Assembly (NCBI GenBank): GCA_002269645.1
Contig: NIVC01003513.1
Coordinates: 30,174 to 94,173, forward strand
DNA length: 64,000 nt
Source of the DNA: Macrostomum lignano
Taxonomy: Eukaryota
Direction of reading: 5' to 3'
Positions 192 to 59,099 of the stretch are shown here, one piece after another. The stretch's first letter is position 1; each line of letters starts with the position of its first letter. Made by a program: the position numbers and the translations under genes. A model generated the notes under the pieces. The model was not told where the DNA came from. It was given only the letters and a program-made list of their open reading frames with translations, and ran no database searches.

Positions 192-1318
192 GTGAGTAGC
201 AGAGTGATCCAGGGAGTGACTGGGAGAGTGATCTGTAGAGTGACTGGGAAAGTGATCTGTAGAGTGACTGGGAGAGTGATCTGTAGAGTGACTGAGAGAG
301 TGATCTGTAGAGTGACTGGGAGAGTGACCTATAGAGTGACTGGGAGAGTGACCTATAGAGTGACTGAAAGAGTGATCTGTAGAGTGACTGGGAGAGTGAC
401 CTATAGAGTGACTGGGAGAGCGATCTATAGAGTGACTGGGAGAGTGATCTATAGAGTGACTGGGAGAGTGACCTATAGAGTGACTGGGAGAGTGACCTAT
501 AGAGTGACTGGGAGAGTGATCTGTAGAGTGACTGGGAGAGTGACCTATAGAGTGACTGGGAGAGCGATCTATAGAGTGACTGAGAGAGTGATCTATAGAG
601 TGACTGGGAGAGTGATCTATAGAGGGATTGGGAGAGTGACCTATAGAGTGACTGGGAGAGTGATCTATAGTGTAATTGGGAGAGTGATCTATAGAGTGAC
701 TGGGAGAGTGATCTATAGAGTGACTGAGAGAGTGATCTATAGAGTGACTGGGAGAGTGATCTGTAGAGTGACTGGGAGAGTGACCTGTAGAGTGATTGGG
801 AGAGTGACCTATAGAGTGATTGGGAGAGTGACCTATAGAGTGACTGGGAGAGTGATCTATAGAGTGACTGAGAGAGTGACCTATAGAGTGACTGGGAGAG
901 TGACCTATAGAGTGACTGGGAGAGTGATCTATAGAGTGACTGAGAGAGTGATCTATAGAGTGACTGGGAGAGTGATCTATAGAGTGACTGGGAGAGTGAT
1001 CTATAGAGTGATTGGGAGAGTGACCTATAGAGTGACTGGGAGAGTGACCTATAGAGTGATTGGGAGAGTGACCTATAGAGTGACTGGGAGAGTGATCTAT
1101 AGAGTGACTGAGAGAGTGATCTATAGAGTGACTGGGAGAGTGATCTATAGAATGACTGGGAGAGCGATCTATAGAGTGACTGAGAGAGTGATCTATAGAG
1201 TGACTGAGAGAGTGACCTATAGAGTGACTGGGAGAGTGACCTATAGAGTGACTGGGAGAGTGACCTATAGAGTGACTGGGAGAGTGATCTGTAGAGTGAC
1301 TGGGAGAGTGATCTGTAA
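192..1318. repeat. Minisatellite array, 24-bp unit (dimer of two 12-mers AGAGTGACTGGG + AGAGTGA(T/C)CT(A/G)T)
   Basis: About 47 tandem copies read directly from the sequence; the 394-aa RVTGRVIY ORF is the translated repeat. Confidence 0.97.
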
Positions 1319-1997
1319 TTTCAATAAAACCTCATTTGGCCTAAGATCTTTAGTGAGAAAATTTGCATGCGAGTGATCTTACAGTGAACCGCAAACCAAA
1401 AAGCAAAGGAACTCTGTGATACAAGCACAGAGACCCTGAGAGGCCCAGCAGAGAGAACAAAGAGTTTCCCTGGGTTGGCTTTTGTACCGGATGAGCTGAC
1501 ACCCTTCAATGAGCAACTCGTGCTTCTGAATGACCACACAGAGCTACCTGGGCCCCACAATATGCAGGAATTTGTGCCAGCCCACCTGCCGAGATCTCAG
1601 ACGGACTCAAAAAGTCATTGTCGTTCAACTTCATTCGTTTTAGTTTTTTATTGGCTCTTTTAGTGTTGCTGCTGAGATCAACGGGCGTGTACAGAAATTG
1701 GGAAGCTGTGGCAGCTGCTTCATCCCATGGGAACATGGCATCCCCTATCCCCTATAATACCCGGACAATGAAAAAATCAAGTCTTGCGTTGGAAAAGAAT
1801 ATCCCGTGAAAATCTGCTTCTTGAAAAAAACTGGTGCCAAGAATTCTAAAGAACCGCAAGTGAAATTCTCAAGATTTTTTTGGCCAAGAAGTTTGATCAG
1901 CCAGTTTAACAAGTCTGACAATGAACGAATGCAATTGTTAAACACGCGGAACTGTTAAACCAAGTATTGGGGATAAATGTGTCTGGGTGAAAACTTT

Positions 1998-3214: not shown

Positions 3215-3990
3215 CCTATATATGAACAGAGGCTCATTGCGCAGGCCCTATACTCAGCATTGGAAGTCTCCGAGCACAGGCAGACAAAGAGCTGACTGCG
3301 TGTTGATAGACAGTCATTGAGATGTGCAATAACCGGTCTGATGGGGAAGCCTCAAGAGGCTGACATGAGTGCCACCGTGAGAGCACTGAAACAGCGGCTT
3401 GACCGCTGGGTCTCCCCACCAGTCCAGTCCACTTGGGTCCCTCCGCATTGCCTCCGAATGCATTGTTTCAAACAGCTTGACGACAGGATGCGGTCTTAAA
3501 TTAGTGTGACTCCTTGAGCAGCGCGTCCTTGCCTCCGGGGCGAGGGGCCGCCCAGAAACCAATGTATATATATACATCAGATATGTATAATAATAGCGCG
3601 AAGGCGAACGGGCCGGTGACACAATTGTGAACTCATCATCGAACTTCAATAAAATGCTTTACTTGAGCACAAGTGAGCAGCGACCCAATAATAATGTGTA
3701 TAACTCAATCTTTTATCCATTCCACCCACCCTGAAGCTCACTCAGGCCTGACAGGTGTGCGAGTGGAGCTATTAAGCCTTCAAACTCGGCCTTCTCACAA
3801 GCCCTTTGAAAATTTCTTTACGCGACCACGAAAAACAGTTCTTTTCCTATCCGCTCAGCCAGGGAGACTCTGGAATGAGATTCTGGAGCGCTAACTCTTC
3901 CCCATCAAAACCGGTGTCCAGTTTCTACTTAAGAGCGCCTCCAAATGCATTGTTTTAAACAGCTTGACGAAAGAATGCAGTCTTTATCCT
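3215..3990 (+). mobile_element. Degenerate CR1/L2-like LINE 3' fragment(s)
   Basis: Broken frames read YEQRL..LY..LE (3220s), FFS..LWNE (3840-3885) and CFKQLD(D/E)RM twice (about 3468 and 3950). These resemble the CR1 ORF2 C-terminus (YEERL..L.SLE.RR / FFS.RVV..WN.L / FK..LD). Heavily decayed. Confidence 0.5.
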
Positions 3991-4440
3991 TATCCTTATC
4001 TTCCATCCTTATCCTTATCTTCCATCCTTATCCTTATCGTCCATCCTTATCTTAATCTTCCATCTTTATCCTTATCTTCCATCCTTATCCTTATCTTCCA
4101 TCCTTATCTTAATCTTCCATCTTTATCCTATCTTCCATCTTTATCAGTTTATTCCATCCTTATCTTCCATCTTTATCCTTATCTTCTATCTTTATCCTTA
4201 TCTTCCATCTTTGTCTTCCATCTTTATCCTTATCTTCCATCTTTGTCTTCCATCTTTATCCTTATCTTCCATCTTTGTCTTCCATCTTTATCCTTATCTT
4301 CCATCCTTATCCTTATCTTCCATCCTTATCCTTATCTTCCATCTTTATCCTTATCTTCCATCCTTATCCTTATCTTCCATCCTTATCCTTATCTTCCATC
4401 CTTATCCTTATCTTCCATAGTTATCCTTATCTTCAAATCC
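3985..4440. repeat. Low-complexity pyrimidine-rich repeat built from TATCCT / TATCTTCCATCCT units
   Basis: Read directly; it generates the spurious LSLSSILILIFHPYPYLP ORFs. Confidence 0.95.
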
Positions 4441-5209
4441 TTATAATTATCTTCTACCCAATTATTTTTTCTAAGCTGGATGACATTTGAGTTCCGTATT
4501 TTCTGCAATTCATATTTAATTTAAAGTATCAATACTTTTATAATCATTGAGATGCTTGGGATTTCAAGACTTTAATCAGTTTTCAAAGTTGAGTAAATCT
4601 GTAATCGCGGAGTCTGCAGAGTTCTGCAGAGACTCAGCAGTGTAAAGGGTAGGGTAGAGACATCACTTTTTTTACTTTGAACTTTATCATCCTTGTTTTC
4701 AATTTTTGGCAGAGCTCTAAACTGAGCACACGGCAGTCAGTCTCATCCAGAACTCCAGTTTTAGCTCTCCTTGGCTGAGCTGCTTCGGTTTCGAGGAATT
4801 TTCGTTCAAACTCGACAAATTGAATCAAAGCGGCCCCGAGTAGGAGGGGGGCAGGGGGGAAGCGGGAGAAAACGGGGAGCCGCGCCTGAAAGCAATGGGA
4901 AAACAATTAGTTGGTGCAGTCAGCGCTGAAATCAGGGGGGAGAGTGGGGAAATTTAATATTGAATCCCTTGACTATGAGCAAATCAGGCGTGTCATCGAT
5001 ATATACAGGTTTGAGCCGACTTTATTAATTTGAGCTGGCGAGCCGGCTAAATTGGAAATGCCTTTGTTAAACTGAAAAGCGGACAAAGCTGCTGCGTGGA
5101 CAGTCAGCCAGCCAGCCTTTTTGCTGCATTTGGTGAAAAAGGCAACAAGGAGCAGAAGTTGACACTGCTTTTCTTTGAAAATAAAAGTGGCGAAAAGTTT
5201 CACTGTGGG

Positions 5210-6995: not shown

Positions 6996-7279
6996 AAGAA
7001 GTCAGGCATGTCATGCCGGGAGGAAAAACAATTTCTAAAAAAGTTTTGTAGTGTTATTTTTAATTTGCTGTAACTTTTTTGTTTTTTTTCAGTTGCACAG
7101 AACTAATCTTAGCGTTTGAGGCAATAAGCCGTTTGAGACTGAATTGATTCTGTGGATCAAGCAATGCAATGACGCGAAAGTTAAATAATGGGAAAAGAGA
7201 AAACTGATAGAAGATTGAGTAGAAGACTCGTGAAAGATGAAGAAAAGAAAGATAGACGGTTCGTAAAAGACGATCGAAG

Positions 7280-8102
7280 ACAGATACAATACAAATAGAA
7301 GACAGATAGAAGACAGATACAATACGAATAGAAGACAGATAGAAGACAGATAAAAGACAGATAAAAGACAGATAGAAGACAGATAGAAGACAGATAGAAG
7401 ACAGATAGAAGACAGATAGAAGACAGATAGAAGACAGATAGAATACAGATAGAAGACAGATAGAAGACAGATAGAAGACAGATAGAAGACAGATAGAAGA
7501 CAGATGCAAGTCAGATAAAAGACAGATAGAAGACAGATAGAAGACATATACAAGTCAGATAGAAGACAGATAGAAGACAGATAGAAGACAGATAGAAGAC
7601 AGATAGAAGACAGATAGAAGACAGATAGAAGACAGATAAAAGATAGATAGAAGACAGAAACAAGTCAGATAGAATACAGATAGAAGACAGATACAAGACA
7701 GATAGAAGACAGATAGAAGACAGATAGAAGACAGATAGAAGACAGATAGAAGACAGATAAAAGACAGATAGAAGACAGATAGAAGACAGATAGAAGACAT
7801 ATACAAGTCAGATAGAAGACAGATAGAAGACAGATAAAAGACAGATAAAAGACAGATAGAAGACAGATAGAAGACAGATAGAAGACAGATAGAAGACAGA
7901 TAGAAGACAGATAGAAGACAGATAGAATACAGATAGAAGACAGATAGAAGACATATACAAGTCAGATAGAAGACAGATAGAATACAGATAGAAGACAGAT
8001 GGAAGACAGATAGAAGACAGATGGAAGACAGATAGAAGACAGATGGAAGACAGATACAAGTCAGATAGAAGATAGATAGAAGACAGATAGAAGACAGATA
8101 GA
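7280..8102. repeat. Purine-rich 11-bp satellite AGAAGACAGAT
   Basis: About 75 copies; the 33-nt triple unit gives the SSICLLSVFYL ORFs on the minus strand. Confidence 0.97.
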
Positions 8103-8685
8103 GGACAGCCTCAGTGAGTATGCAATAGCACTGAGAGGGGTAACAAAACACTCAAAGTCAATCTTCCATTTAACAAGGCGACAGCGAACTCCAAAAGAAT
8201 GGACAAAGGAAACTTATGCGCACATTTTATTGAACTTCACGCATACATTAAACAGTTACAGTTTAGCAAGCAGAATGGTAAATCAACTATATAGAATCCA
8301 TGGTAATCAATACTCGCTAATGCAGAACACGCTATCCAATGGCTGTTGCTATTTCATATTTGAGTCTCGTTTTCTAAAAAAACAACTGGAACGGATCAGC
8401 CTGCAGTCGTTCGTACAGGTAGCAAGGAAAATTTAACATTAGGCAAATCATATAAATAGACAATAATAACAATAACAGTAATTAAGGTACATGGAAAAGA
8501 GACACGAGCACAAGCAGAGACCATATTAAGCTATTCCAAAGAGCCCTGACAAATCATTTATATAAGAAATTAACCGAAGGAAAAACAGTTTTTTCTTAGC
8601 ATTAGAAATGTCGTTTTCTACTGTAGAATATTCAAGATGTACAGAGCGGCGGCACTGGCAAAGCAGAGAATTTTATCCGAGCAGT

Positions 8686-10065
8686 TCAGCGAATCCAAGT
8701 CGGTGGCGGCAGGAAGGCGCCGCTGCGCAGCAGGCGATGGTAGGCTTCCAGATCGAACGGCGGGTGCTGATACGGAGGCGGCGGCGGCGGCGGCGGTAGG
8801 AAAGGCGCCGAAAGTGCCGGCGGAGGCGCCTGGCGCGGCGGCGAGGAACTTGACGACGATGTTTGGCGCTTGCAGGCGCTGCTGCTGCCGCCGCCGCTGA
8901 TGAGGCTGTCGATGGTGAACCCGGGAGAGCCGCTCCGGCGCCTCCGCCGCTGCTGCTGCTGTGGAGATGCCGGCTGCTGCTGTTGATGAGGCTGGCTCTG
9001 GGGATGCTGGCTGTGATGGCTCAGGCTGAGGTTGAGCGGATGATTTGGCAGGCCGGCTAGAAGGGGCCCGAGGCCCGGCAGGAGGCTTGTCGGGGGATGT
9101 CGAGTCGGCGGATTCGACATTTGCGGCGGAGGCGGCTGCTGCTGCTGGGAATGATGAGGCGAACTTTGGCTGCGACTGTGAAAAGCGGCGGCCGCCGCTG
9201 CTGCCGCTGCTGCCGCTGCCGCGGGAAACAGGCCCAGAGGCGGCGGAGGCGGCGGAGGCGGCAGCGGAGGCGGCGGCGGCGGATGCGACATGCCGACATG
9301 CGAATTGGCTGCCATAAACGAGGCGGCAGAGGCGGCAATGGGGAAGTAAAGGTCGGGCTGCGTCTGCCGCTTGTAGCGCTTCCGCCGGCGCAGGAAGCTG
9401 CCATTGTCGAACATGTCCTCGGACTGTGGGTCCAGCGTCCAGTAGTTGCCCTTGCCCGGGTTGCCCGGCTCCCTGGGGATCTTCACGAAGCAGTCGTTCA
9501 GAGACAGATTGTGCCTGATGCTGTTCTGCCAGGCAGGGAACCTGCGTTCGGAGTGAAGGTTTTATACATTTATATACAGTGTAGAGTAAACACCAGAAAC
9601 ACAATGGAAACTGTAGTGTTTCTAAGAAATAGCCTACCGCTCTTTGTAGTACGGGAATCGATTGATGATGAATTCGCAGATTCCGCTGAGCGTGAGCTTG
9701 CGCTCCGGCGACTGCAGGATCGACATGGTGATGAGGGCGATGTAGCTGTAAGGCGGCTTCACGTGATGCCCGCGCCGCTTCTGCTGCTGCTGCTGCGGCT
9801 GCTGCTCCTGCGGCAGCTCAAGCTCAGCGTCCTCGTCGGAGTCTGCATCTGCTGATGCGGAAGTTGAAGCAGCCGCAGCTGCAGCCGCAGCCGCCGCCGC
9901 TGCCGCGGAGAATTCTTCGTCGCAGCTGCTGTCGCCGCTGTAGTCCTCGGCCAAGTCGGCAGGCGGCGAGAAAAACAAGGAGGTGGTGGCAGCGGCGGTG
10001 GCGCCGGCGGCGGCTGCTGCAGACTTCCCGGCGGAAGCGCTCTCGGCTGAGGAGGCGACCGACAT
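8686..10065 (-). CDS. foxD: Forkhead box D transcription factor (2 exons, 427 aa)
   Basis: Exon 1 10065..9638, intron 9637..9542 (96 bp, GTAGGC...GCAG), exon 2 9541..8686. The spliced forkhead domain [41 protein letters not shown]|[58 protein letters not shown] is diagnostic of FoxD. An eh1-like FTIDSLI motif lies C-terminal. Confidence 0.97.
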
Positions 10066-25703: not shown

Positions 25704-27768
25704 TTACGCGTTGCGATCGGCGGCCACAGAGTTGGGCGCGGCGTCCTGATGGTTGGGTATAGAATTGACGGAGATGGGCAGGAAGATGACGCTGTCCGGG
25801 CCGCGGACGGGCACGTAGCCTAAGCTGAACAGATTCGGCGAGTCCAGATTAAACTCGGTCGAAGTGAACGCCGACTGCGGTATCTGCAGGATCGGGGCGG
25901 AGCCGGGCGCCGGCGAGAATGTCGCGGAGGTTGGCGTGGCAGCAGAGCCGGCGGCCATGGCCAAATTGCTGAGATTGCTCAGGTCCAGCGAGGCTGGTAT
26001 GTGGCTCTTCCGGTCTGATAGCGAGCTGCCGGCTGCGGCGGCAGCGGCGGCGGCGGCGCGACCGCCGGGCGACAGCAGGTCGCTGAGGCCCTGGTGGCTG
26101 AGCAATGGCAGAGGAATCTCGGGCTTCACTGTGGTCACAGAGCTCACGGAGACTACTGGCATAGGGAATTCCGAGCTCTGCTGCTGATGCTGCTGCGGCG
26201 GCTGTCGCTGTGGATGCTGCTCGGGCTGCTGGTGATGATGAAGATGCTGATGATGAAGCTGCTGATGATGATGATGATGCTGCTGGTGATGCTGAGGCAC
26301 AGAAGGCTGAGCTTGTTGCTGCTGTTGAGCCAGCGGATGCTGCGGGGGCGGCGGCGGTGGCTGCATGTGATGCTGAAGGTGCTGCTGCTGATGGTGCTGC
26401 ACAGGCGAGACAGACGCCTGATCCTGCTGCTGAAATGGAAGCTGAGCCGGCGGCGGCGGCGGTGGCGGCGGGGGCTCCGCTGGCATAGCAGCCGCGGGGG
26501 CACCGCTTCCGGCTCCGACAGGGGAAGCAGCCTCGCCCGGTGAGGGCATCATGCCGCCGCCACTGCCTCCTCCGTCTGGCGACTTCTCCGAGCTGAGGCA
26601 GGCTTGGATCAGAGCCTTGCCATTGTTGGATTGCACCATGTTGTTCAGCTTCTCTGTAGTGTAGGTGTACACGTGGCCGGTCTCTGAGGCGACCAATAGG
26701 AGCACGTGGGCGCCTGCAGGGAATGCAGGAGAGCATTATTAGGATTTGATTGAAACTGCTCCTGGCATTATGTAATGGTCGAATTGCTGAAAAGTCGTTG
26801 CAAACAACTCTGGTGACTCTAGCGACTCTGGGGGGGGGACTGTTGCGTCACAAGCGCGTCACGTGACTTGTAGAATCGTAAGAGTCTCGAAGAAAGTCAT
26901 TTATTAATCGTTGTGTTAGCGCTAAACTTTCTACTAACTCAGTAGGCTAGTTAGAGTGCAATTAGAGTTCCATAGGCTATACCGAGTGTTTGTTGCGTAA
27001 CTGTAACTCTGACTCTGTAACGCGCCCAGAGCGTCTCAGAAGTGACGCAATAAAGCGCTTCTTTTGCGACTTTTTAGCGACTGGAGAACGCCGCTAAATC
27101 AAGCGACGCAAATGCACTTTAAACCGGACTCTACAGCCCCAGAGTATAAGGCGACTCTTGGGCGACCTGAACCGTGACATTTCGTCGTTTTAAGACTCAA
27201 TTCTTTCCCTTTTTACCTATGTCATTTGCAACGACTCTGGGAGGCTTCTTGGCCTAGGTACCATTTTTATGGGGATAATTCTTGAGATTTATTGCAGTTG
27301 GGATTGTCTCTGGAGAATTTTTTATTATCGATAAGTAGGGTTGATATTTATATTGTAAAAAGATCAGTGTGACGCAGCTTTAGATTGCGCACCGGTTAGA
27401 GAGGCCAGCTCGTACGCCTTCTTCATCAGTCCAGTCTTACGCTTCGAAAACGTAGTAAAGCGCCTATTCTTATCCTGTATGAATTCAATTTTAATTTTCT
27501 GCTTTCCGCGCGACTTCTTCTTCGGCGGCGGCTGGTCGGCGGCGCCGTCGATCCGCTGGTCGGGGCCGCTGGCGGGCAAGTAGGGCGACACCGACCGGGA
27601 TCTGTCCTCGCCACCAGACGGCGACGGGCCCGGCGTGAGGTCGTCGCAGCAGTCCTCGGGATTCTCGGCATGAAATCGCCAACAGTTTGAGAAGGGCTGG
27701 TCGCCGTGCTGAGCGCACAGTTCGTCGCTTGAACCGGTGGCTGACATGCTATTGTGCGGAGTCGGCAT
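25704..27768 (-). CDS. SRF: Serum response factor-like MADS-box transcription factor (2 exons, about 461 aa)
   Basis: Exon 1 27768..27393, intron 27392..26714 (GTGCGC...CTGCAG, phase 1), exon 2 26713..25704. The spliced MADS+SAM region SRGKQKIKIEFIQDKNRRFTTFSKRKTGLMKKAYELASLTG|AHVLLLVASETGHVYTYTTEKLNNMVQSNNGKALIQACL is SRF/type-I, not MEF2. The start could instead be Met 27747. Confidence 0.95.
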
Positions 27769-36169: not shown

Positions 36170-36385
36170 GTCACTTTTGGCACGACAAGCACTTATTTTG
36201 GCACCACAGGCACTCATTTTGGCGCTGTAGGCACTTGTTTTGGCACGTCGCAAGCATTTATTTTGGTGCCACAGGCACTTATTGTAACACCGCAGGCACT
36301 CATTTTAGCGCCGCAGACACTCATTTTGGGGCCGCAGGCACTCATTTTGGCACCACAGGCACTTATTTTAGCAGTGCAAGCACTC
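36170..36385. repeat. Degenerate 22-bp tandem repeat (CAGGCACTCATTTTGGCACCAC-like)
   Basis: About 9-10 imperfect copies; source of the APQALIL ORFs. Confidence 0.85.
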
Positions 36386-38161
36386 AATTGCTTGCCTCAT
36401 GGTTTTTGGTACCCACCACCCACTCCCACACCCAATTTATGGTGGCCAGGTCGGCCAGCAGTTGCGCATGTAGGCCTATGATGAGAAACAAATAACACTT
36501 CATTTCGACTCTAGCCTTATAAATAATATAGACCCATGGCCATATTTCAAGGTTAAGGATTATATACAATACAACTGCAATATTGAAATACATTCTAATC
36601 TACTTCATAGCAAGACCCGATAAGCCAGATATTCTATGTAGGCCTAGTCTATTTGGTAAAAGACCAAATGTATTACCAAGGCAATCTGACTGTTAAATAC
36701 TTGTAGTAATAAATAAATAAATAAATAAATAGAGATCGATGATAATTCATACAAATCTTTAAAAAAATGATCGTCAGTTAGACTTTTTAAAAGTATCTCT
36801 TGTAAGTAACAAAACAAAACTTAAAGAAGCTCCATTAATTATTAGCATTCTTACTTTGTAATTCTTACTGTGCAAGACGCTAAAAAGACTTTACTATCTT
36901 TTCATTGTCGATGTCCTTAGAAGTTGATGATACATTTCCTCACGCCAAAGTAACAAAAAACAGAATTTGCGCACTTTTTGTTCCGGAGTAGCTACCTTTT
37001 TGCCATTAATTCGCCAGAACTGCAGATTTATTAATTTTTAAATAAAAAAATCTTGTAAGTGAGTCATAAATCTAAATCCTCATATTTGGAAATGGGGGGG
37101 GGGATAAAAATGAATGACCCACAGGAAGTATGTACTGTACATGTATAACAATATTCATTTCAAAAATACTTCTGCATGAAATTTTAGCGAATCCGAGACG
37201 CAAATTCTAAGCTATACTCTAACGCGTGTTTGGCACAAATATGGGGGTGGGATTTATATGTATACGTGCATTGCATGGAGGGAGGAAAAAGATGGACCAG
37301 TGCGATTGAGCGTTTGATAGACTCGGAAAGCACCAGAAAAAAAACAAATGACCGGTTCCAAGATAGCGCGATCGATGTACCTCGGTAGTAAGCTTTAGAA
37401 CTTCCAACAAGGTGTACATGTAGGCTTAATTAGCATGTGAATGCATATTTAATGCTGGAGGCAATAGTTTTAATCTCTCAGCAGCAAACTAGCAAACGAG
37501 ACGAACCGGGCCGGCCCATGCCCCCGATGCTATTCAAGGACCACTATAGAAGTTACTGCTTGTCCTTGATACTATTATATACATGTACAAACATAAAAAA
37601 ATGTGAATACCATACATACGCTCGTATGTAGTTAAGATGAAGTAAGTGCCTGACTGCAGGTTATAATCACAACTCTCTGCATCATCAAAACATCTCTTCA
37701 CGTGGCACGTGTCGTCGACGAGCGGACAAGCACTATAGCTTGTGCAAATAACGAGATGGTCACGCAAGTTGCTCAATGGTTAACAAACAAGCTTGTTGCT
37801 GTAGAATAGCGGCATCCAGGCTGCAGCAATTTCGACTCTCGTTGTTGAGTAAACATTTGCACACTAGATTAAAATTGCGGTAGATTCTATACAGTAGTCC
37901 AAGAAGCACGTTTGTAAAAAAATCAGCTGCTTTAGATACAGCACTTCTACTCATACGAGTAGAAGAAGACAGTTGAACATTTGCCGCAACTTGACAGGGC
38001 ATTAGCTTGGACAATATTTGGCTAGCAAATTCATCATAAACACAGAAATGTATGCATAATTGCTATGCAACATGCATATAACCTCCAAAGATTGCCCCCA
38101 TCCACCACAAAGACTTTGATCTGCTGTCTATACTAGATTCCTTACACCATACTAGAAGAAA

Positions 38162-40415
38162 ATGAAGCCATCATTTGCGATCCCTCTGGTATTGTGCGCC
38201 GCAATAAGCATCGGCACTGTGCTGGCCGGCAAGTCAAAATAAATTACTTTAATATAAATGTATGCTCATTACTCGTATATGACAATTTATCATTATCATT
38301 ATGACATCTGTATCACGTCGTTTTAACAGCCGAGTGCCCATCTGGTTACAAGAAGGTATGCGTAAAAAAATTCATATGCAGTTCTAAGTGCCACATCGTT
38401 CGCCGACGCGGGTCCCTGGCATTCACCATCGACGACACGGGCTCTATGTGGCGCGAGATCAGAGCTGTCAAGACCAACATCAAGCGCATTGTAAAAGCCA
38501 ACCGTCGATTCAAGGACTACGTCATCGGAACATTCAACGACCCATACAGGCGCAAAGTCATCAGGTCCCGGTCTGCCTACACCATACTCAGATTCCTTAA
38601 ACGCGTGAGGGCCAGACGGGGTGGCGACTGTCCGGAATTCGCTATGCGCGGCATCCTGGACGCTGCCAGACTCGCCAGACCCCGCTCGGTGCTCTTCGTG
38701 GTGACCGACGCCTCGGCAAAGGATGCACGACTCAAATACGCTGTGGCTCGCTACCTGCGCTCTAAGAAGATTCGTCTGTTTGCTGTAAAGGTTGGCAGAA
38801 TGTGCGGCAGGCGGTACCGACGCGAGTTCGAATTCTTGGCCAGACAGACTGGAGGCCGAGTGCTGCGGTTCAGACGCCGAGTGAACTTCCGTTATGTGAG
38901 TTTATCAATACCTCTCGAAACTATTGATTGGCTTTTATTAAGACAAAACAAACAGTAATTAATAAAACCATCGAAATTTCACAATATAATTGAATGTTAT
39001 ACTCTTCGTATTTTTAAAGATCTGGTCATATCTGTCTCTGATTGCAGCTTATGCGGTTCATTACAAAAGCCGTGTATGGTAAAGTGGCGTTCAACTCTAT
39101 GCCTAGCAGCGGTGCGCGGCTTCGTCGACTGAGACCACGTAAGAAAGTAAAGTGCTTGTTCAGTCACTAACAAGGACCATAATGCCAGAACCGCCTCCGC
39201 AAATATACAAAGGAAAAAGTGCCTTCCGAGTCTATCATACGCTCAATGGCGTGCGTGCAAGCCATAAAAAGCATACATTTAATACTTAAAAATTGAAAAC
39301 ATGTCCATTTCAGGCTGCTGCAAGTGGCGCACTATAACAAAGTGTGAAAAGGATAAAACGAAAGGTACGTGGGACAAATACGAGAAAAGAGTAAATTCAG
39401 GTGATAAGGAGAAAAACTATATACTACTTCATACAGGCTGTCCAGCCGACTACTACAAGTTGGAAGAGACAGTTCGCGTGTGCAAGTGCAGCAATGGAAC
39501 CGACCAGACCAAGCCACCGCCACGCGTCGTCGGGTCCCTAGCATTCACCATCGACAACACGGGCTCTATGTGGCGCGAGATCAGAGCTGTCAAGACCAAC
39601 ATCAAGCGCATTGTAAAAGCCAACCGTCGATTCAAGGACTACGTTATCGGGACATTCAACGACCCCTACAGGCGCAAAGTCATCAGGTCCCGGTCTGCCT
39701 ACACCATACTCAGATTCCTTAAACGCGTGAGGGCCAGACGGGGTGGCGACTGTCCGGAATTCGCTATGCGCGGCATCCTGGACGCTGCCAGACTCGCCAG
39801 ACCCCGCTCGGTGCTCTTCGTGGTGACCGACGCCTCGGCAAAGGATGCACGACTCAAATACGCTGTGGCTCGCTACCTGCGCTCTAAGAAGATTCGTCTG
39901 TTTGCTGTAAAGGTTGGCAGAATGTGCGGCAGGCGGTACCGACGCGAGTTCGAATTCTTAGCTAGACAGACCGGAGGCCGAGTGCTGCGATTGCGGAACA
40001 GGCGCCATTTCAAATACGTGAGTCATTACGTGTCCAAAATTCCTTAGACATAAACATAGAGCCACAGTCATAACCATAACCTTATCATAACCTTATTCCA
40101 TGCCAAACAAGGTACTGAACTACATCGGTCACGCGTCCAAAGGCGAAACTACCTTTACGTCGATGCCATCGAGCGAGAAACATTTAAGAAAAAAGTGGAA
40201 GCCAGGCAAGTATGAAAAGGACAAACATTTCCAATCAGTAATGTATGCACTTTGCATACTTTTTAAGAGCAAATTTGGAACGTACAAGTGTTTGAAACCG
40301 ACTACTTCTTGAACTTTCAGAGTGCATCTGCAAGATAAAGACTGTGGTCAAGTGTGTCACCCGTTGTCCTGACGGATATGAGCGTGTTAACGACACCTGT
40401 GTCAAGCCTAGGTAG
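38162..40415 (+). CDS. Secreted, highly cationic protein with two hemicentin/VWA7-type vWA domains and Cys-rich linkers (7 exons, about 514 aa)
   Basis: Exons 38162-38228, 38330-38895, 39048-39138, 39314-39364, 39437-40017, 40112-40205 and 40321-40415 join in frame. Signal peptide MKPSFAIPLVLCAAISIGTVLA. Motifs SLAFTID(D/N)TGSM, GGDCPEFAMRGI and VVTDASAKD match the hemicentin/VWA7 vWA pattern. Introns 1 and 6 have GCAAGT donors. The 72-bp intron 4 is also open in frame. Confidence 0.85.
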
Positions 40416-42206: not shown

Positions 42207-43379
42207 TCACAAATCGTCCGAACTGCTGCTGTCAGACATTGACCCGAAGTCGTCGTTGTCCTCGAGGTCGGACAGCAGCGAGGAGCCGCCGCCGGCTGAA
42301 GCAGCTCGACCAGCAGCGGCAGTTCGGCCGCGCTTCTTAGCCGGCTTACCGTCGGCCAGCAGCAGGCGAAGCACCTGCCGGTCCTCTTCGCCAAGATTCA
42401 AATCGGCGAAGACGTCATCGGACTGTTGCTGACGCCGGCGTCTCTTGGCGGCGGCGGAGGCCCGGCCGGCGACACTGCCGCCAGTTGACGCCGATGCCGA
42501 CGATGACGAAGCTGCGCCGACGCCGGCATTAGCAGCAACCAGCCGACGACGCTTAGCAGCCGACGGTCGACCGATTGTCGCTCCGCCGCTGCCGCCGACG
42601 CTGACGCCGACTCCGCTAGCAGGCGGACGTGCTGGAGGCGCCGCCCGGCCGCGAACCGAAGCAACGCAGTCGCGACGCTCAATGTCGCTCTTATTAGTGC
42701 TTTTGTGCCGCCAGCAGATTGGATAGAGTCGCACAACAGCCTCATCAATGCTGCGCGTACAAGGCCCAGTGAACACAACGCTGCCAGTGGCGAATACCTT
42801 AGCTAATACGCGAATATCTTTAAAGCGCAAGTTCAGCGCCGGGTGTAGCTCGGGCTCGTAGTCGGCCATCTGCGGCAGCTCGTCAGCGATGCCAGGCAGC
42901 CTGACTAGAAACGGCAGCTCGCAGGTGGCGTGCACGTTAGTAATGCGGAAATTCGAGAACCGACAGGGGAAACCAATCTTTTGGATTCGCCGGGCTATTC
43001 GGCGAGCTCCGCGACGCGAGTCCAGCTCGCTGGCGCTGCCGGCTACAAATATTTTGCCGCTAGAACGAATGCTAGCTACGCAGTAGGGCTTGCGCAGTCG
43101 CATAGTTACCATGTAGGTCTCCGGCTTGTACTCAACGTCCAGGCCGTCTAGGGCAATCTTTTTCAGGTTCAGATGGCACTGGGTGGAGAAACAACTAACA
43201 ACATTGTGCAGGGTGACGGTGATATCGCGATAGCCGGTGCTACTTTCTCCGCTACCGCTGCCACTGGGTCCTGCGCCAGACGAAGCAGCTTCTTGTTGCT
43301 GCTCCTGATCCTGCTGCTGTCGGTAAGGACGCGGTCCTGCACTCCTGTCGCACAGGGCAGACGACATGCGGAGAAGCAT
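42207..43379 (-). CDS. TBPL1: TBP-related factor 2 (TRF2/TLF/TBPL1)-like protein, single ORF of 390 aa
   Basis: The uninterrupted core ITVTLHNVVSCFSTQCHLNLKKIAL...VEY...MVTMRLRKPYCVASIRSSGKI...ARRIARRIQKIGFPCRFSNFRITNV.ATC...YEPELHPA...KVFATGSVVFTG has TRF2-type (CHL, VTMRLR.P, YEPELHP) rather than TBP-type signatures. The exact start is uncertain. Confidence 0.9.
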   Translation of the reverse strand: MLLRMSSALCDRSAGPRPYRQQQDQEQQQEAASSGAGPSGSGSGESSTGYRDITVTLHNVVSCFSTQCHLNLKKIALDGLDVEYKPETYMVTMRLRKPYCVASIRSSGKIFVAGSASELDSRRGARRIARRIQKIGFPCRFSNFRITNVHATCELPFLVRLPGIADELPQMADYEPELHPALNLRFKDIRVLAKVFATGSVVFTGPCTRSIDEAVVRLYPICWRHKSTNKSDIERRDCVASVRGRAAPPARPPASGVGVSVGGSGGATIGRPSAAKRRRLVAANAGVGAASSSSASASTGGSVAGRASAAAKRRRRQQQSDDVFADLNLGEEDRQVLRLLLADGKPAKKRGRTAAAGRAASAGGGSSLLSDLEDNDDFGSMSDSSSSDDL

Positions 43380-56545: not shown

Positions 56546-57130
<585 letters not shown>

Positions 57131-59099
57131 TAGTCAGTCAGCAAATATCCTACAGCACTGTAGCCCCTCCCCACTTAATGCACTGTCAGTGCGCCGTTTC
57201 TAAAGCAATATACTCGTAGATCGATCAGGTCGAAGCCCGTTGTTCACTGAGCGAGAGATGGGAAAGAGAGAGTGAGCTGGGGGTAACTCCGACTGGCAAT
57301 CTCTATGCTGATGCGGCTTCCAATGAGGCTTACGAGAGTGGGGAAACGGTTGCAGAAGCCCACTCGACCGCGCACACATTGCAGCAGCTTATACTATAAG
57401 TTTAGCCGATGCCTGCAGATTTTCGAATGCTCTACCATCCCATACTCGCCCCCCCCCTTGTAGTCGATCAATCATGCGCAGCTGGGAAATGAGTCTTAGG
57501 GGAAGCTGCGCGTCTGTGCTTAGCATCCACTTTCTCCTGCGGGCCTCTCTCTCTCTGCCTCTGTCTCTCCATTCTCTTTCTACTCCGTCGCTCTGGCCCA
57601 AATTGAGCTGTTACTCAAGTTGACGCGAACGGCAGCAGACGCGGCCCCACGTGGATAGATTGATCGCCAAGAGAATTTGGTCCCAGCCGCCAGCATTGCC
57701 GCCCGCTATGCCAAAAATTCCACACCGTCCCGCGAGTCCAATAGTTGTTGAATTGACCTACCGGATGAGAAACTCTTCACAGATCACAGATGAAAAACCG
57801 CCTTCCCAGCTGATCGATTTCATCTCCCTGAGAGGTCCATTTTTTCTCCCAAAGACTCTCTCCATCCTCTTTGCTTTCCCGATTTCAGCAATCATCAACT
57901 CCACCAGCAGAAAATGAACTCGCTTTTAGGGGGAGCGAAAAAAGCCCACACAGAAGGCCATCAGTGGCCGCAGCTGGTTGAAATTGCCGCCGCTGGTCAC
58001 CTCTCTCTCTCAGCTTGCTGACGGGTAATTGAAGTCGCCTGTGCAAGTAATGGGCACTGCAGCCTCTGGCGATGAGAAAGTGAAGTGGGAGTCGGGTAGT
58101 TAGGGACGTAGAGAGAGAGGCGGCAAGGAAATCGAAGAAGGAGCTGGTTGAGCTGAAGAGAAGGAGCTGGTCAGGTAGAATATATCGCTATATAAAAAGT
58201 AATTTAGTCCAGCTGAAGCCAGCAGAAAGCGTTTTTCTCCTTTCTCTTCAAGCGGGAGAGAGAGAGAGACAGAGGAGAAAGTGGATGTCAGGCAAGCCCC
58301 CCGGGGGGGGGGATTACTCTCTTGGCAACCGCCCAACCTGATTTTTAGTGGCCATTTTAGCGGAAGAAAAGTCGCGATAGACAGTCTGCCGAAGATACTG
58401 GAACTCCCTCAGTTCTATACTCTACTCTGGTATTTCGCCATTAGCAGCTAGCGAGCTCGCATCCCGCAGGACACCCCAATCGCTTTTTCTCTCTCCACTG
58501 CCCTCCCACTTCAGCCTTGAGGATTCGTGCTCAAGCATGTCTCCTTTCCTCATCTACCGGCTGTCCCCACCCTCATCATCCAAGCCTGCCTTAATTCCTT
58601 TACTTTCACCTCGCTTTCACCCTAAACTGGGCAGGCTGGCCCAGTCTGGGCCTGACTTTTTGGCATCTTTATTGCATTCCAAAGTCGAGCTAAACCCCAG
58701 CCCTGAAAGCCTCTTCTTTCCCCCATTCTGCTCCAGTTCTGCCCCGCAAGCCCGTCCCGCTATCCAATGTTAACCGATGTCTCCCAATACCCTTCCAATT
58801 TTTACCCAACTCATGTCAGCCCGATCAGGGTGGGGATACGACGAGTTGAGTCCAATATGCAGGATCCTTAAGCCTTGAGCTCAGATGATGAGCACAGGAC
58901 TATATAAAAAGCAAAACAGAAGCAGGGTGAGAATAGGGGAATCCGAGAGCATTATGAGAGCACTATTGCTGTATAAAATAGTACAAACACTTGTCTTGAA
59001 CCAACTCTAAAGGTATAGAAAAGATAAAACTAAGGTTTACACCACGACCAAAACTAAGATACTCATAGAAACAGTTAGTGTTTAAATAAATCAGTCAGC

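What the first reader, a model, noticed from the sequence alone, without database searches (positions are those of the whole stretch)
38162..40415. Secreted ultra-cationic tandem-vWA protein: candidate adhesive/cement or antimicrobial component
Seen: the ORF track shows only fragments, but hand splicing gives a complete 7-exon gene. The layout is signal peptide, Cys-rich segment (ECPSGYKKVCVKKFICSSKC), vWA, Cys linker, vWA, Cys tail (CICKIKTVVKCVTRCPDGYERVNDTCVKPR). By my hand count each 161-aa vWA core has about 34 Arg + 11 Lys against about 12 Asp/Glu (net about +33). Known: the motifs match the N-terminal vWA of hemicentin/VWA7, which is not normally this basic and in hemicentin is followed by Ig repeats. 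Lys/Arg-rich secreted proteins act as cohesive glue components in flatworm adhesion (e.g. Mlig-ap1). Inference: a stand-alone, charge-remodelled vWA dimer that binds polyanions (glycans, membranes, substrate) could be an undescribed adhesive, mucus or defence protein family.
Basis: partly seen in the sequence, partly recalled or inferred. Interest (0 to 1): 0.8.

Follow-up and report, generated by a model that had tools for sequence, protein, structure and literature searches.

The report
Secreted ultra-cationic vWA protein, flatworm
This is a real, intact Macrostomum lignano gene for a small secreted protein built from one or two hemicentin-type vWA domains, each carrying about +34 net charge; its close relatives turn up in published proteomes of the worm's sticky footprints, so it is a testable candidate glue or mucus component, with no function shown yet.

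Summary
Window 38162-40415 (+) splices into a 7-exon, 514-aa ORF. Its layout is signal peptide, Cys segment, vWA, Cys linker, vWA, Cys tail. The pI is 11.2, and each 165-aa vWA unit has K11-12, R33-35 and 11-12 D/E (net +34).

The domains are Pfam VWA_4 (hemicentin/VWA7 type, E=6e-64). They fold confidently as vWA and keep the family's conserved motifs, including a MIDAS-like D-x-T-G-S.

The window is M. lignano assembly Mlig_3_7. The gene stands alone and is not the 5' end of a hemicentin.

There is a caveat. The public annotation of this locus (BOX15_Mlig029053g1) is a 273-aa single-vWA protein, equal to the 514-aa model minus exactly one 1122-nt repeat period. Junctions 1/2, 5/6 and 6/7 have outside support, but 2/3, 3/4 and 4/5 have no transcript support. 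Either product is equally cationic.

The gene belongs to a family found so far almost only in Macrostomum, with ultra-basic and near-neutral members. Peptides of four paralogues occur in published footprint, tail and lectin pull-down proteomes. None from this gene were found.

Best reading: an extracellular polycationic cross-linker in secreted sticky material. Function is inferred, not shown.

The parts
38162..38228 (+). Exon 1: start codon and signal peptide (MKPSFAIPLVLCAAISIGTVLA|A). It is followed by a GC-AG intron (donor GCAAGT at 38229).
   Evidence: model. Mean Kyte-Doolittle hydropathy of residues 5-22 is 2.35. The junction TVLAAECPSG is present in the NCBI protein P0251 and is colinear in transcript contig L002.
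38330..38895 (+). Exon 2: N-terminal Cys segment (CPSGYKKVCVKKFICSSKC) plus the complete vWA domain 1 (net +34).
   Evidence: The intron position after the vWA matches paralogue P0006 in L001.
39048..39138 (+). Exon 3: post-vWA tail 1 (LMRFITKAVYGKVAFNSMPSSGARLRRLRPR).
   Evidence: The exon 2/3 junction and the exon 3 donor are used in UniProt model P0001. The equivalent exon exists in P0006. No transcript evidence was found.
39314..39364 (+). Exon 4: a 51-nt in-frame Cys half-module (CCKWRTITKCEKDKTKG). It is skipped in model P0001.
   Evidence: The CCKW...KC motif and a separate exon at the same place occur in paralogues P0003 and P0006. No transcript evidence was found.
39437..40017 (+). 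Exon 5: Cys half-module (CPADYYKLEETVRVCKC), a short linker and the complete vWA domain 2 (net +34).
   Evidence: The AlphaFold2 model of residues 243-514 has a core with pLDDT above 90.
40112..40205 (+). Exon 6: post-vWA tail 2 (VLNYIGHASKGETTFTSMPSSEKHLRKKWKP). It is followed by a GC-AG intron (donor GCAAGT at 40206).
   Evidence: The junctions HFKY|VLNY and KWKP|ECIC are in P0251 and are conserved in P0121.
40321..40415 (+). Exon 7: C-terminal Cys module (CICKIKTVVKCVTRCPDGYERVNDTCVKPR) and stop TAG (40413-40415).
   Evidence: P0251 and P0121 have the same C-terminus and stop. tblastn finds no further exons downstream.
38409..38870 (+). Copy 1 of the internal 462-nt repeat (vWA core), 98% identical to copy 2. 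Positions 38545-38837 are 100% identical to 39667-39959.
39531..39992 (+). Copy 2 of the internal repeat, offset by 1122 nt (a multiple of 3). Deleting one period reproduces the annotated 273-aa protein.

Best explanation
**What it is (shown).** This is a real, intact, single-copy-per-haplotype Macrostomum lignano gene, locus BOX15_Mlig029053g1. It encodes a small secreted protein with these parts:
- a signal peptide;
- short disulfide-rich modules;
- one or two hemicentin/VWA7-type (VWA_4) vWA domains.

The vWA domains keep the family's conserved motifs: D-x-T-G-S-M, FNDP, GGDCPE, TDASAKD and a conserved Cys pair. About 28% of their residues are Arg or Lys, giving net +34 per domain and a pI near 11. 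It is the most cationic member found of a family seen almost only in Macrostomum.

**How it most likely works (inferred).** It is exported into secreted extracellular material such as adhesive footprint, glue or mucus. There it acts as a folded polycationic cross-linker or cohesive filler.
- The Arg-rich surface binds polyanionic glycans, such as the glycosylated adhesive protein, the glycocalyx or mucus.
- The conserved MIDAS-like site(s) could bind acidic side chains of partner proteins in a metal-dependent way.
- In the tandem form, two domains give bivalent bridging.
- The odd number of cysteines in the mature protein (19 in the tandem form, 11 in the single form) could allow an intermolecular disulfide.
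For: **Gene integrity and model:**

**Domain identity and fold:** Pfam VWA_4. The AlphaFold2 model has mean pLDDT 84.6 and a core above 90. Foldseek gives probability 1.0 to vWA and integrin I domains, ITIH1, CMG2 and the mussel byssus tandem-vWA protein PTMP1. The conserved motifs, including the MIDAS-like one, are retained.

**Charge:**. It is directional: against the 273-aa homologue P0121, the window gene is more positive at 22 sites and less positive at 4.

**Constraint:** dN/dS is about 0.1 against P0121 and 0.19 between the internal repeats.

**Family context**
- Ultra-basic paralogues are P0006 (pI 11.4, same SP + 2 vWA + Cys-module layout), P0009 and P0123.
- The giant P0122 has the same tandem VWA_4 head, a VWD domain and about 3000 aa of K/R/Cys-rich repeats.

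**Published mass spectrometry (PMC6410801 supplements)**
- Peptides matching P0122, P0006 and P0003 exactly are in the sheet 'footprints_Trypsin_intact_1'.
- P0006 and P0009 peptides are in the PNA pull-down from 1000 tails.
- P0009-type proteins are in amputated tails.

**Background:** in this species cationic K/R regions of Mlig-ap1 provide cohesion, and heparin blocks attachment.
Against: - No peptide of this gene itself was found in the stored, truncated parts of those tables, although it should yield about 17 usable tryptic peptides.
- The footprint samples also contain yolk and tubulin proteins. Presence there is not proof of a glue role even for the paralogues.
- The tail-less control sheets were not available.
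- No expression site, binding data or knock-down exists for any family member in the literature searched.
- The tandem form lacks transcript proof.
Confidence: 0.4

Rival explanations
1. The expressed product is the 273-aa single-vWA protein, as annotated (BOX15_Mlig029053g1). Under this reading exons 3, 4 and the 5' part of exon 5 are not part of the main mRNA, so the 'tandem dimer' is a genomic feature rather than the protein.
For: - P0251, the NCBI protein for this exact locus, equals the model minus one 1122-nt repeat period.
- Two of the 437 possible deletion points are GT-AG (38564 and 38790).
- An intronless 1073-nt transcript contig from another sample (L002) encodes a 273-aa single-vWA homologue with the same ends.
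Against: - A 462-nt 98% repeat with 293 identical bases is what short-read assemblers typically collapse (my reasoning). P0251 is what a collapsed tandem transcript would look like.
- The 79 codons unique to exons 3, 4 and 5' exon 5 are open. The chance of that is about 0.02 if unconstrained (my estimate).
- These exons have canonical in-phase splice sites at the same positions as in paralogue P0006, and both vWA units of P0006 have MS peptides.
- They keep the family's CCKW..KC and CP.xY..VC motifs.
- Prediction P0001 joins exons 2-3-5.
- Both genome copies keep them intact.
Confidence: 0.35
2. The protein is as described but has a non-adhesive extracellular role: a structural component of epidermal mucus, rhabdite secretion or basement-membrane ECM, closer to the matrix role of hemicentin's vWA.
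For: - The domain is the hemicentin-type vWA.
- Footprint samples contain general surface secretions and debris, not only glue.
- This gene's own peptides are absent from the stored footprint and tail lists.
- Flatworm rhabdites stain with acid dyes, which implies basic proteins (general knowledge, not tested here).
Against: There is no direct evidence. Extreme polycationic charge is not a feature of known hemicentin or VWA7 domains.
Confidence: 0.25
3. It is a reproductive secretion: seminal fluid from the prostate glands, or cement-gland or eggshell material.
For: The tail plate of M. lignano also holds prostate and cement glands, so tail-derived proteomes would include them. Small, secreted, lineage-restricted proteins are typical of such secretions.
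Against: - No vWA or hemicentin-like entry appears in the supplementary tables of the seminal-fluid in situ screen (PMC5977470).
- In the positional RNA-seq paper the only hit is a collagen-like transcript (PMC4490696).
- dN/dS of about 0.1 is not the fast evolution typical of reproductive proteins, although dS is saturated.
Confidence: 0.12
4. It is a cationic antimicrobial or defence protein that kills microbes by binding anionic membranes, as eosinophil major basic protein does with a lectin fold.
For: Only the charge (pI 11.2, 26% K+R) and secretion.
Against: - It is a folded 19-kDa domain with the VWA_4 motifs kept, which argues for specific protein or glycan binding.
- It has no amphipathic peptide-like region and no acidic pro-piece.
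- There is no supporting literature or family link.
Confidence: 0.07

Closest known systems
Hemicentin-1 / VWA7 N-terminal vWA domain (Pfam VWA_4, PF25106)
   Same: It is homologous. The score is 215 bits over two domains. The D-x-T-G-S-M, FNDP, GGDCPE and TDASAKD motifs and the conserved Cys pair are all kept.
   Different: - It has no Ig, EGF, G2F or fibulin modules (hemicentin).
- It has no PF25107, PF23560 or PF23619 domains (VWA7).
- It is a stand-alone 273-514 aa protein with private Cys mini-modules.
- Net charge is +34 per domain, against about -23 to +3 in outgroup members.
M. lignano paralogue P0006 (BOX15_Mlig025149g1; transcripts RNA815_2254 / RNA1310_12097)
   Same: - Same layout: signal peptide, Cys segment, vWA, tail, CCK/CP Cys linker, vWA, tail, Cys end.
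- Same intron positions.
- pI 11.4 and net +23 to +27 per domain.
- 46% identical.
   Different: - It is less cationic.
- It has one extra intron inside vWA2.
- It ends after the CCK-like half-module.
- Its peptides are in published footprint and PNA pull-down proteomes, and this gene's are not.
Mlig-ap1, the cohesive protein of M. lignano temporary adhesion (PMC6410801)
   Same: It is a secreted protein of the same species with an extreme Lys/Arg content. In the published model its positive charge mediates cohesion and is masked by polyanions such as heparin.
   Different: - It is not homologous.
- Mlig-ap1's charge sits in more than 3600 aa of K/R-rich regions around a C-lectin, vWD-C8-TIL and EGF core. 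Here the charge is on the surface of a folded vWA domain.
- Mlig-ap1 has in situ, antibody and RNAi evidence. This gene has none.
PTMP1, proximal thread matrix protein 1 of the mussel byssus (PDB 4cn8, 4cn9, 4cnb)
   Same: It is a small secreted stand-alone protein made of two tandem vWA domains in an adhesive holdfast. It is a Foldseek hit at E about 4e-6, with rmsd 3.5 Å over about 190 residues. The PDB title of 4cn9 records a zinc-occupied MIDAS motif.
   Different: It shares only superfamily-level similarity (12-17% identity) and belongs to a different vWA subfamily. Its collagen-binding role is recalled from memory and was not tested here. It is not known to be polycationic.
P0122 (BOX15_Mlig022224g1), a 4112-aa M. 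lignano footprint protein
   Same: Its N-terminal 525 aa have the same SP, Cys, VWA_4, Cys linker, VWA_4, Cys module layout (42% identity). It is strongly cationic overall, with 30% K+R in the repeat region.
   Different: It continues into a VWD domain and about 3000 aa of K/R/Cys-rich repeats. Its vWA domains themselves are only +6 to +10. In effect the window gene resembles the 'head' with the charge moved into the vWA domains.

Membership tests
VWA_4 (PF25106; hemicentin-1/VWA7-type vWA domain) | Profile match above Pfam's gathering score. | tested here: met
   215.1 bits against a cut-off of 27, E=6.1e-64, in two stretches.
VWA_4 (PF25106; hemicentin-1/VWA7-type vWA domain) | Conserved motifs D-x-T-G-S-M, FNDP, GG(G)DCPE and TDAxAKD, and the conserved Cys pair. 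| tested here: met
   All are present in both units. In a 115-sequence alignment the invariant columns are M61, D92, G119, D121, C122, P123, E124, D148, D153 and C180.
VWA_4 (PF25106; hemicentin-1/VWA7-type vWA domain) | Alpha/beta vWA (Rossmann-like) fold. | tested here: met
   The AlphaFold2 core has pLDDT above 90. Foldseek gives probability 1.0 to many solved vWA and I domains.
Hemicentin (fibulin-6) | An N-terminal vWA followed by a long Ig array, then EGF and fibulin-type C-terminal modules. | tested here: not met
   There are no Ig, EGF or fibulin Pfam hits and no further homologous exons in the window. The stop at 40413-40415 is shared with P0251 and P0121. The next gene is TBP-like on the minus strand.
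VWA7 | VWA_4 embedded between the VWA7 N-terminal domain (PF25107) and the C-terminal PF23560 and PF23619 domains. | tested here: not met
   None of these families is hit at E<=1, whereas they are listed for most non-flatworm hits.
Macrostomum multi-VWA_4 / Cys-linker family (provisional, defined here) | Signal peptide, VWA_4 units separated by a tail, a CCKx(5)KC module and a CPxGYxxV...C module, with shared intron positions. | tested here: met
   Alignment with P0003, P0004, P0006, P0009, P0122 and P0123. The intron positions match P0006 in L001.
Flatworm adhesive/cohesive secretion proteins (functional class, e.g. Mlig-ap1/ap2) | Expression in adhesive gland cells, presence in footprints, and loss of attachment on RNAi. 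| not testable with these tools
   Paralogues, but not this gene, have peptides in footprint, tail and PNA pull-down tables. No in situ or RNAi data were found for any family member.
Flatworm adhesive/cohesive secretion proteins (functional class, e.g. Mlig-ap1/ap2) | Sequence homology to Mlig-ap1 or ap2 (C-lectin, vWD-C8-TIL, EGF, TSP-1, K/R-rich regions). | tested here: not met
   None of these domains is in the model. The domain description of Mlig-ap1 and ap2 comes from PMC6410801.

The most novel reading that the evidence does not exclude
The ultra-cationic VWA_4 proteins (this gene, P0006, P0009 and relatives, and the VWA_4 head of the giant P0122) could be an unrecognised third class of components of the flatworm temporary adhesive. 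They would be folded, metal-site-bearing polycations that bridge the glycosylated surface-binding protein (Mlig-ap2) and the anchor-cell glycocalyx. They would also be a direct target of the postulated polyanionic releasing factor.
Probability: 0.18. Interest if true: 0.75.

Novelty: new variant of a known kind. Interest (0 to 1): 0.5.

Why it matters
**If the reading is right.** The reversible glue of M. lignano is currently explained with two giant proteins. It would then also use small, expressible, folded polycationic vWA proteins.

A 29-58 kDa protein is far easier to make recombinantly than Mlig-ap1 or ap2. That would make the charge-based attach/release model directly testable in vitro through heparin and glycan binding, coacervation and MIDAS mutants. 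It could also be of use for biomimetic adhesives.

**Independently of function.**
- The locus is a clear case of a globular adhesion domain driven to +34 net charge under purifying selection.
- The gene's public annotation is probably collapsed by one repeat unit.

**If the reading is wrong.** It is one more uncharacterised, lineage-specific secreted protein.

Tried and rejected
- **PDB sequence search with the full model:** no hit.
- **Single-sequence AlphaFold2:** unusable, pLDDT 37.7. It was replaced by an alignment-based model.
- **Literature searches for gene, transcript and run identifiers** (Mlig029053, Mlig025149, Mlig022224, Mlig027525, RNA815_2254, RNA1310_*, A0A1I8GUE1, SRR28338165): nothing found.
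- **Lengerer 2018 tail in situ screen:** not held.
- **Seminal-fluid screen and positional RNA-seq supplements:** no family member.
- **Searches for 18 peptide strings of this gene in the PNAS mass-spec supplements:** none found. Those files are truncated.
- **A search with the unique junction segments:** found only P0251 and P0001.
- **A search with P0121:** found no further orthologues.
- **Selection test between the two genome copies (L003/L004):** impossible, because the gene region has no substitutions.
- **Rejected, 5' fragment of a hemicentin:** see the membership test.
- **Rejected, pseudogene or assembly artefact:** the ORF is intact, the gene is present in two assembly contigs, and dN/dS is about 0.1.
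Full report
**1. The observation**

The region 38162-40415 (+) shows only fragmentary ORFs. Seven exons join in frame to a 514-aa protein ending at TAG 40413-40415. The exons are 38162-38228, 38330-38895, 39048-39138, 39314-39364, 39437-40017, 40112-40205 and 40321-40415.

Introns are 72-175 nt long with 34% GC, against 55% GC in the exons. Four introns are GT-AG. Introns 1 and 6 use the GC donor consensus G|GCAAGT.

The protein begins with a hydrophobic signal-like segment (mean hydropathy 2.35 over residues 5-22). SignalP was not available.

- Unit 1 has K11 R35 D8 E4 and unit 2 has K12 R33 D7 E4. Both are net +34 over 165 aa.
- The whole protein has pI 11.16, and the mature form has net +94.

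**2. What the domains are**

Pfam assigns both domains to VWA_4 (PF25106), the hemicentin-1/VWA7-type vWA, at E=6e-64. No solved structure matches by sequence.

An alignment-based AlphaFold2 model of residues 243-514 has mean pLDDT 84.6. The vWA core is above 90 and the Cys modules are at 50-73.

Foldseek matches it with probability 1.0 to many solved vWA-fold structures. These include bacterial vWA, ITIH1, integrin I domains, CMG2/ANTXR, calcium-channel alpha2delta and the tandem-vWA mussel byssus protein PTMP1.

The family's invariant motifs are intact: D-x-T-G-S-M, FNDP, GGDCPE, TDASAKD and a Cys pair. The MIDAS-like D-x-T-G-S motif is therefore retained.

In the predicted secondary structure, 39 of the 46 K/R in the core lie in helices and loops and 7 lie in strands. 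That fits a surface overlay of charge on an otherwise normal fold. This last point is inference, because no coordinates could be inspected.

**3. Source and public annotation**

The closest proteins are all from Macrostomum lignano. The window is 100% identical over 14.25 kb to a contig of assembly Mlig_3_7 (GCA_002269645.1). A second contig carries the same gene with no substitutions.

Three independent protein models touch this locus.

- **P0251 (NCBI BOX15_Mlig029053g1, 273 aa).** It has exon 1, the start of exon 2, the end of exon 5, and exons 6 and 7. That equals the 514-aa model minus exactly one 1122-nt repeat period. The same protein results from a deletion at any of 437 positions, two of them GT-AG.
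- **P0001 (UniProt A0A1I8GUE1, 383 aa).** It is a partial model joining exons 2-3-5. It skips exon 4 and reads through the exon 5 donor.
- **P0121 (273 aa).** It comes from an intronless 1073-nt contig of run SRR28338165 (organism not given). It is 75-79% identical in protein and about 77% in DNA, and has a single vWA with the same N- and C-terminal modules.

Together these confirm junctions 1/2, 5/6 and 6/7, both GC-AG introns, and the stop. They leave junctions 2/3, 3/4 and 4/5 without transcript proof.

I consider the tandem product more likely, at about 0.65, for these reasons:
- An internal 98% repeat with a 293-nt identical tract is the kind of sequence that short-read assembly typically collapses (my reasoning).
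- The 79 codons unique to the middle exons are open.
- Their splice sites are canonical, in phase, and at the same positions as in paralogue P0006.
- They keep the family's CCKW..KC and CP.xY..VC motifs.

Either product is equally cationic. The mature 273-aa form has pI 10.9 and net +47.

**4. History of the repeat**

The two vWA cores differ at 9 of 462 nt. A central 293-nt tract is identical (38545-38837 = 39667-39959), and divergence rises towards the edges.

The flanking tail exons (3 versus 6) are only about 32% identical in protein and show no DNA similarity. By contrast, exon 6 is about 66% identical to the tail of P0121.

The duplication therefore looks older than the split from the P0121 lineage, and the cores appear to have been homogenised by gene conversion. 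This is inference.

Against P0121, dN is 0.13-0.17 and dS is about 1.3-1.5, which is saturated. Omega is about 0.1, indicating purifying selection. Charge-changing differences are directional: the window gene is more positive at 22 sites and less positive at 4.

**5. The family**

An exhaustive profile-free search found 12 clusters at E<1e-30. Those with names are nearly all M. lignano. Beyond them the scores fall to generic hemicentin and VWA7 hits (E about 1e-22 and weaker).

Members fall into these groups:
- **Ultra-basic 2-vWA proteins.** P0006/7 have pI 11.0-11.4. P0009/P0124 have pI 11.4. P0123 belongs here too.
- **Near-neutral 3-vWA proteins.** P0003 has pI 6.7 and P0004 has pI 8.6.
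- **A SUEL-lectin, VWA_4, Arg-rich protein.** This is P0130/P0250.
- **The 4112-aa P0122.** It has the same tandem-VWA_4 head, then a VWD domain and about 3000 aa with 30% K+R and 10% Cys.

These groupings rest. The window gene's domains are the most cationic found. 19-31 of its 46 K/R columns per domain are shared with other cationic members (basic paralogues, P0121 and P0122), against 6-13 in P0003.

**6. Evidence on function**

No paper found discusses these proteins. However, the supplementary mass-spectrometry tables of Wunderer et al. 2019 (PMC6410801) contain hemicentin-like vWA entries with pI 10.5-11.8.

Their listed peptides match paralogues exactly:
- **P0122, P0006 and P0003:** in the sheet 'footprints_Trypsin_intact_1' (Dataset S2).
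- **P0006 and P0009:** in the PNA-lectin pull-down from 1000 tails (Dataset S1).
- **P0009-type proteins:** in amputated tails (Dataset S3).

In that paper's model, cationic K/R regions of Mlig-ap1 give cohesion, heparin blocks attachment and added cations block release. Related flatworms also use a very basic cohesive protein, Tmed-ap3, with pI 13.2 (PMC9229212).

This makes an adhesive, cohesive or mucus role plausible for the family.

Several points weigh against over-reading:
- The footprint samples also contain yolk and tubulin proteins.
- The tail-less control sheets were cut from the stored files.
- None of 18 peptide strings from this gene occurs in the stored text.
- The seminal-fluid screen and positional RNA-seq supplements list no family member.

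**7. Verdict**

The sequence observation is confirmed.
- It is a stand-alone, charge-remodelled, hemicentin-type vWA protein.
- It belongs to a family found almost only in Macrostomum.
- Its relatives are physically present in secreted and tail material.

Its own expression, isoform and function remain untested. It is a new variant of a known kind of domain protein, and is already annotated as a hypothetical protein, probably with a collapsed model. It offers a cheap, direct experimental test in a tractable model organism.

Noticed in passing
window 38162-40415; L003/L004 6001-8255: The public NCBI gene model for this locus (BOX15_Mlig029053g1, 273 aa) equals the 7-exon model minus exactly one 1122-nt repeat period. 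It is probably a collapsed-repeat artefact of transcript assembly, or else a real single-vWA isoform.
   Followed up: yes
window 38545-38837 and 39667-39959: A 293-nt perfectly identical tract lies inside two otherwise diverging repeat units, whose flanking exons are only about 32% identical in protein. This looks like recent gene conversion between the two vWA exons.
   Followed up: partly
P0122 (BOX15_Mlig022224g1; not in the window): A 4112-aa M. lignano protein has a tandem VWA_4 head, a VWD domain and about 3000 aa of K/R/Cys-rich repeats. Three of its peptides appear in the published footprint proteome, yet no paper found in the searches names or discusses it.
   Followed up: partly
window 38229-38329 and 40206-40320: Two of the six introns use GC-AG with the same GCAAGT donor. 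Both are confirmed by the annotated protein. This is an unusually high share for one small gene.
   Followed up: partly
window 42207-43379 (-): An uninterrupted 390-aa ORF has two TBP-domain repeats (Pfam TBP, E=2e-37). It is annotated as a gene in both assembly copies, tail-to-tail with the vWA gene.
   Followed up: partly
window 8618-10065 (-), 25704-27768 (-), 56618-57133 (+): Exons of a forkhead-domain gene, an SRF-type MADS-box gene with a long Gln/His/Pro-rich region, and an RRM (ELAV-like) gene. All are ordinary neighbours unrelated to the finding.
   Followed up: partly
window 192-1376, 3964-4446, 7060-8151, 36175-36386: Several minisatellite-like tandem arrays give long spurious repetitive ORFs. 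One is a 21-nt unit repeated about 10 times at 36175-36386, about 1.8 kb upstream of the gene.
   Followed up: no
The first word-indexed protein search missed two very close relatives: P0251 (identical to the query apart from the missing repeat unit) and P0121 (79% identical). Later searches found both. Absences in that tool's output should not be read as absence from the database.
   Followed up: yes
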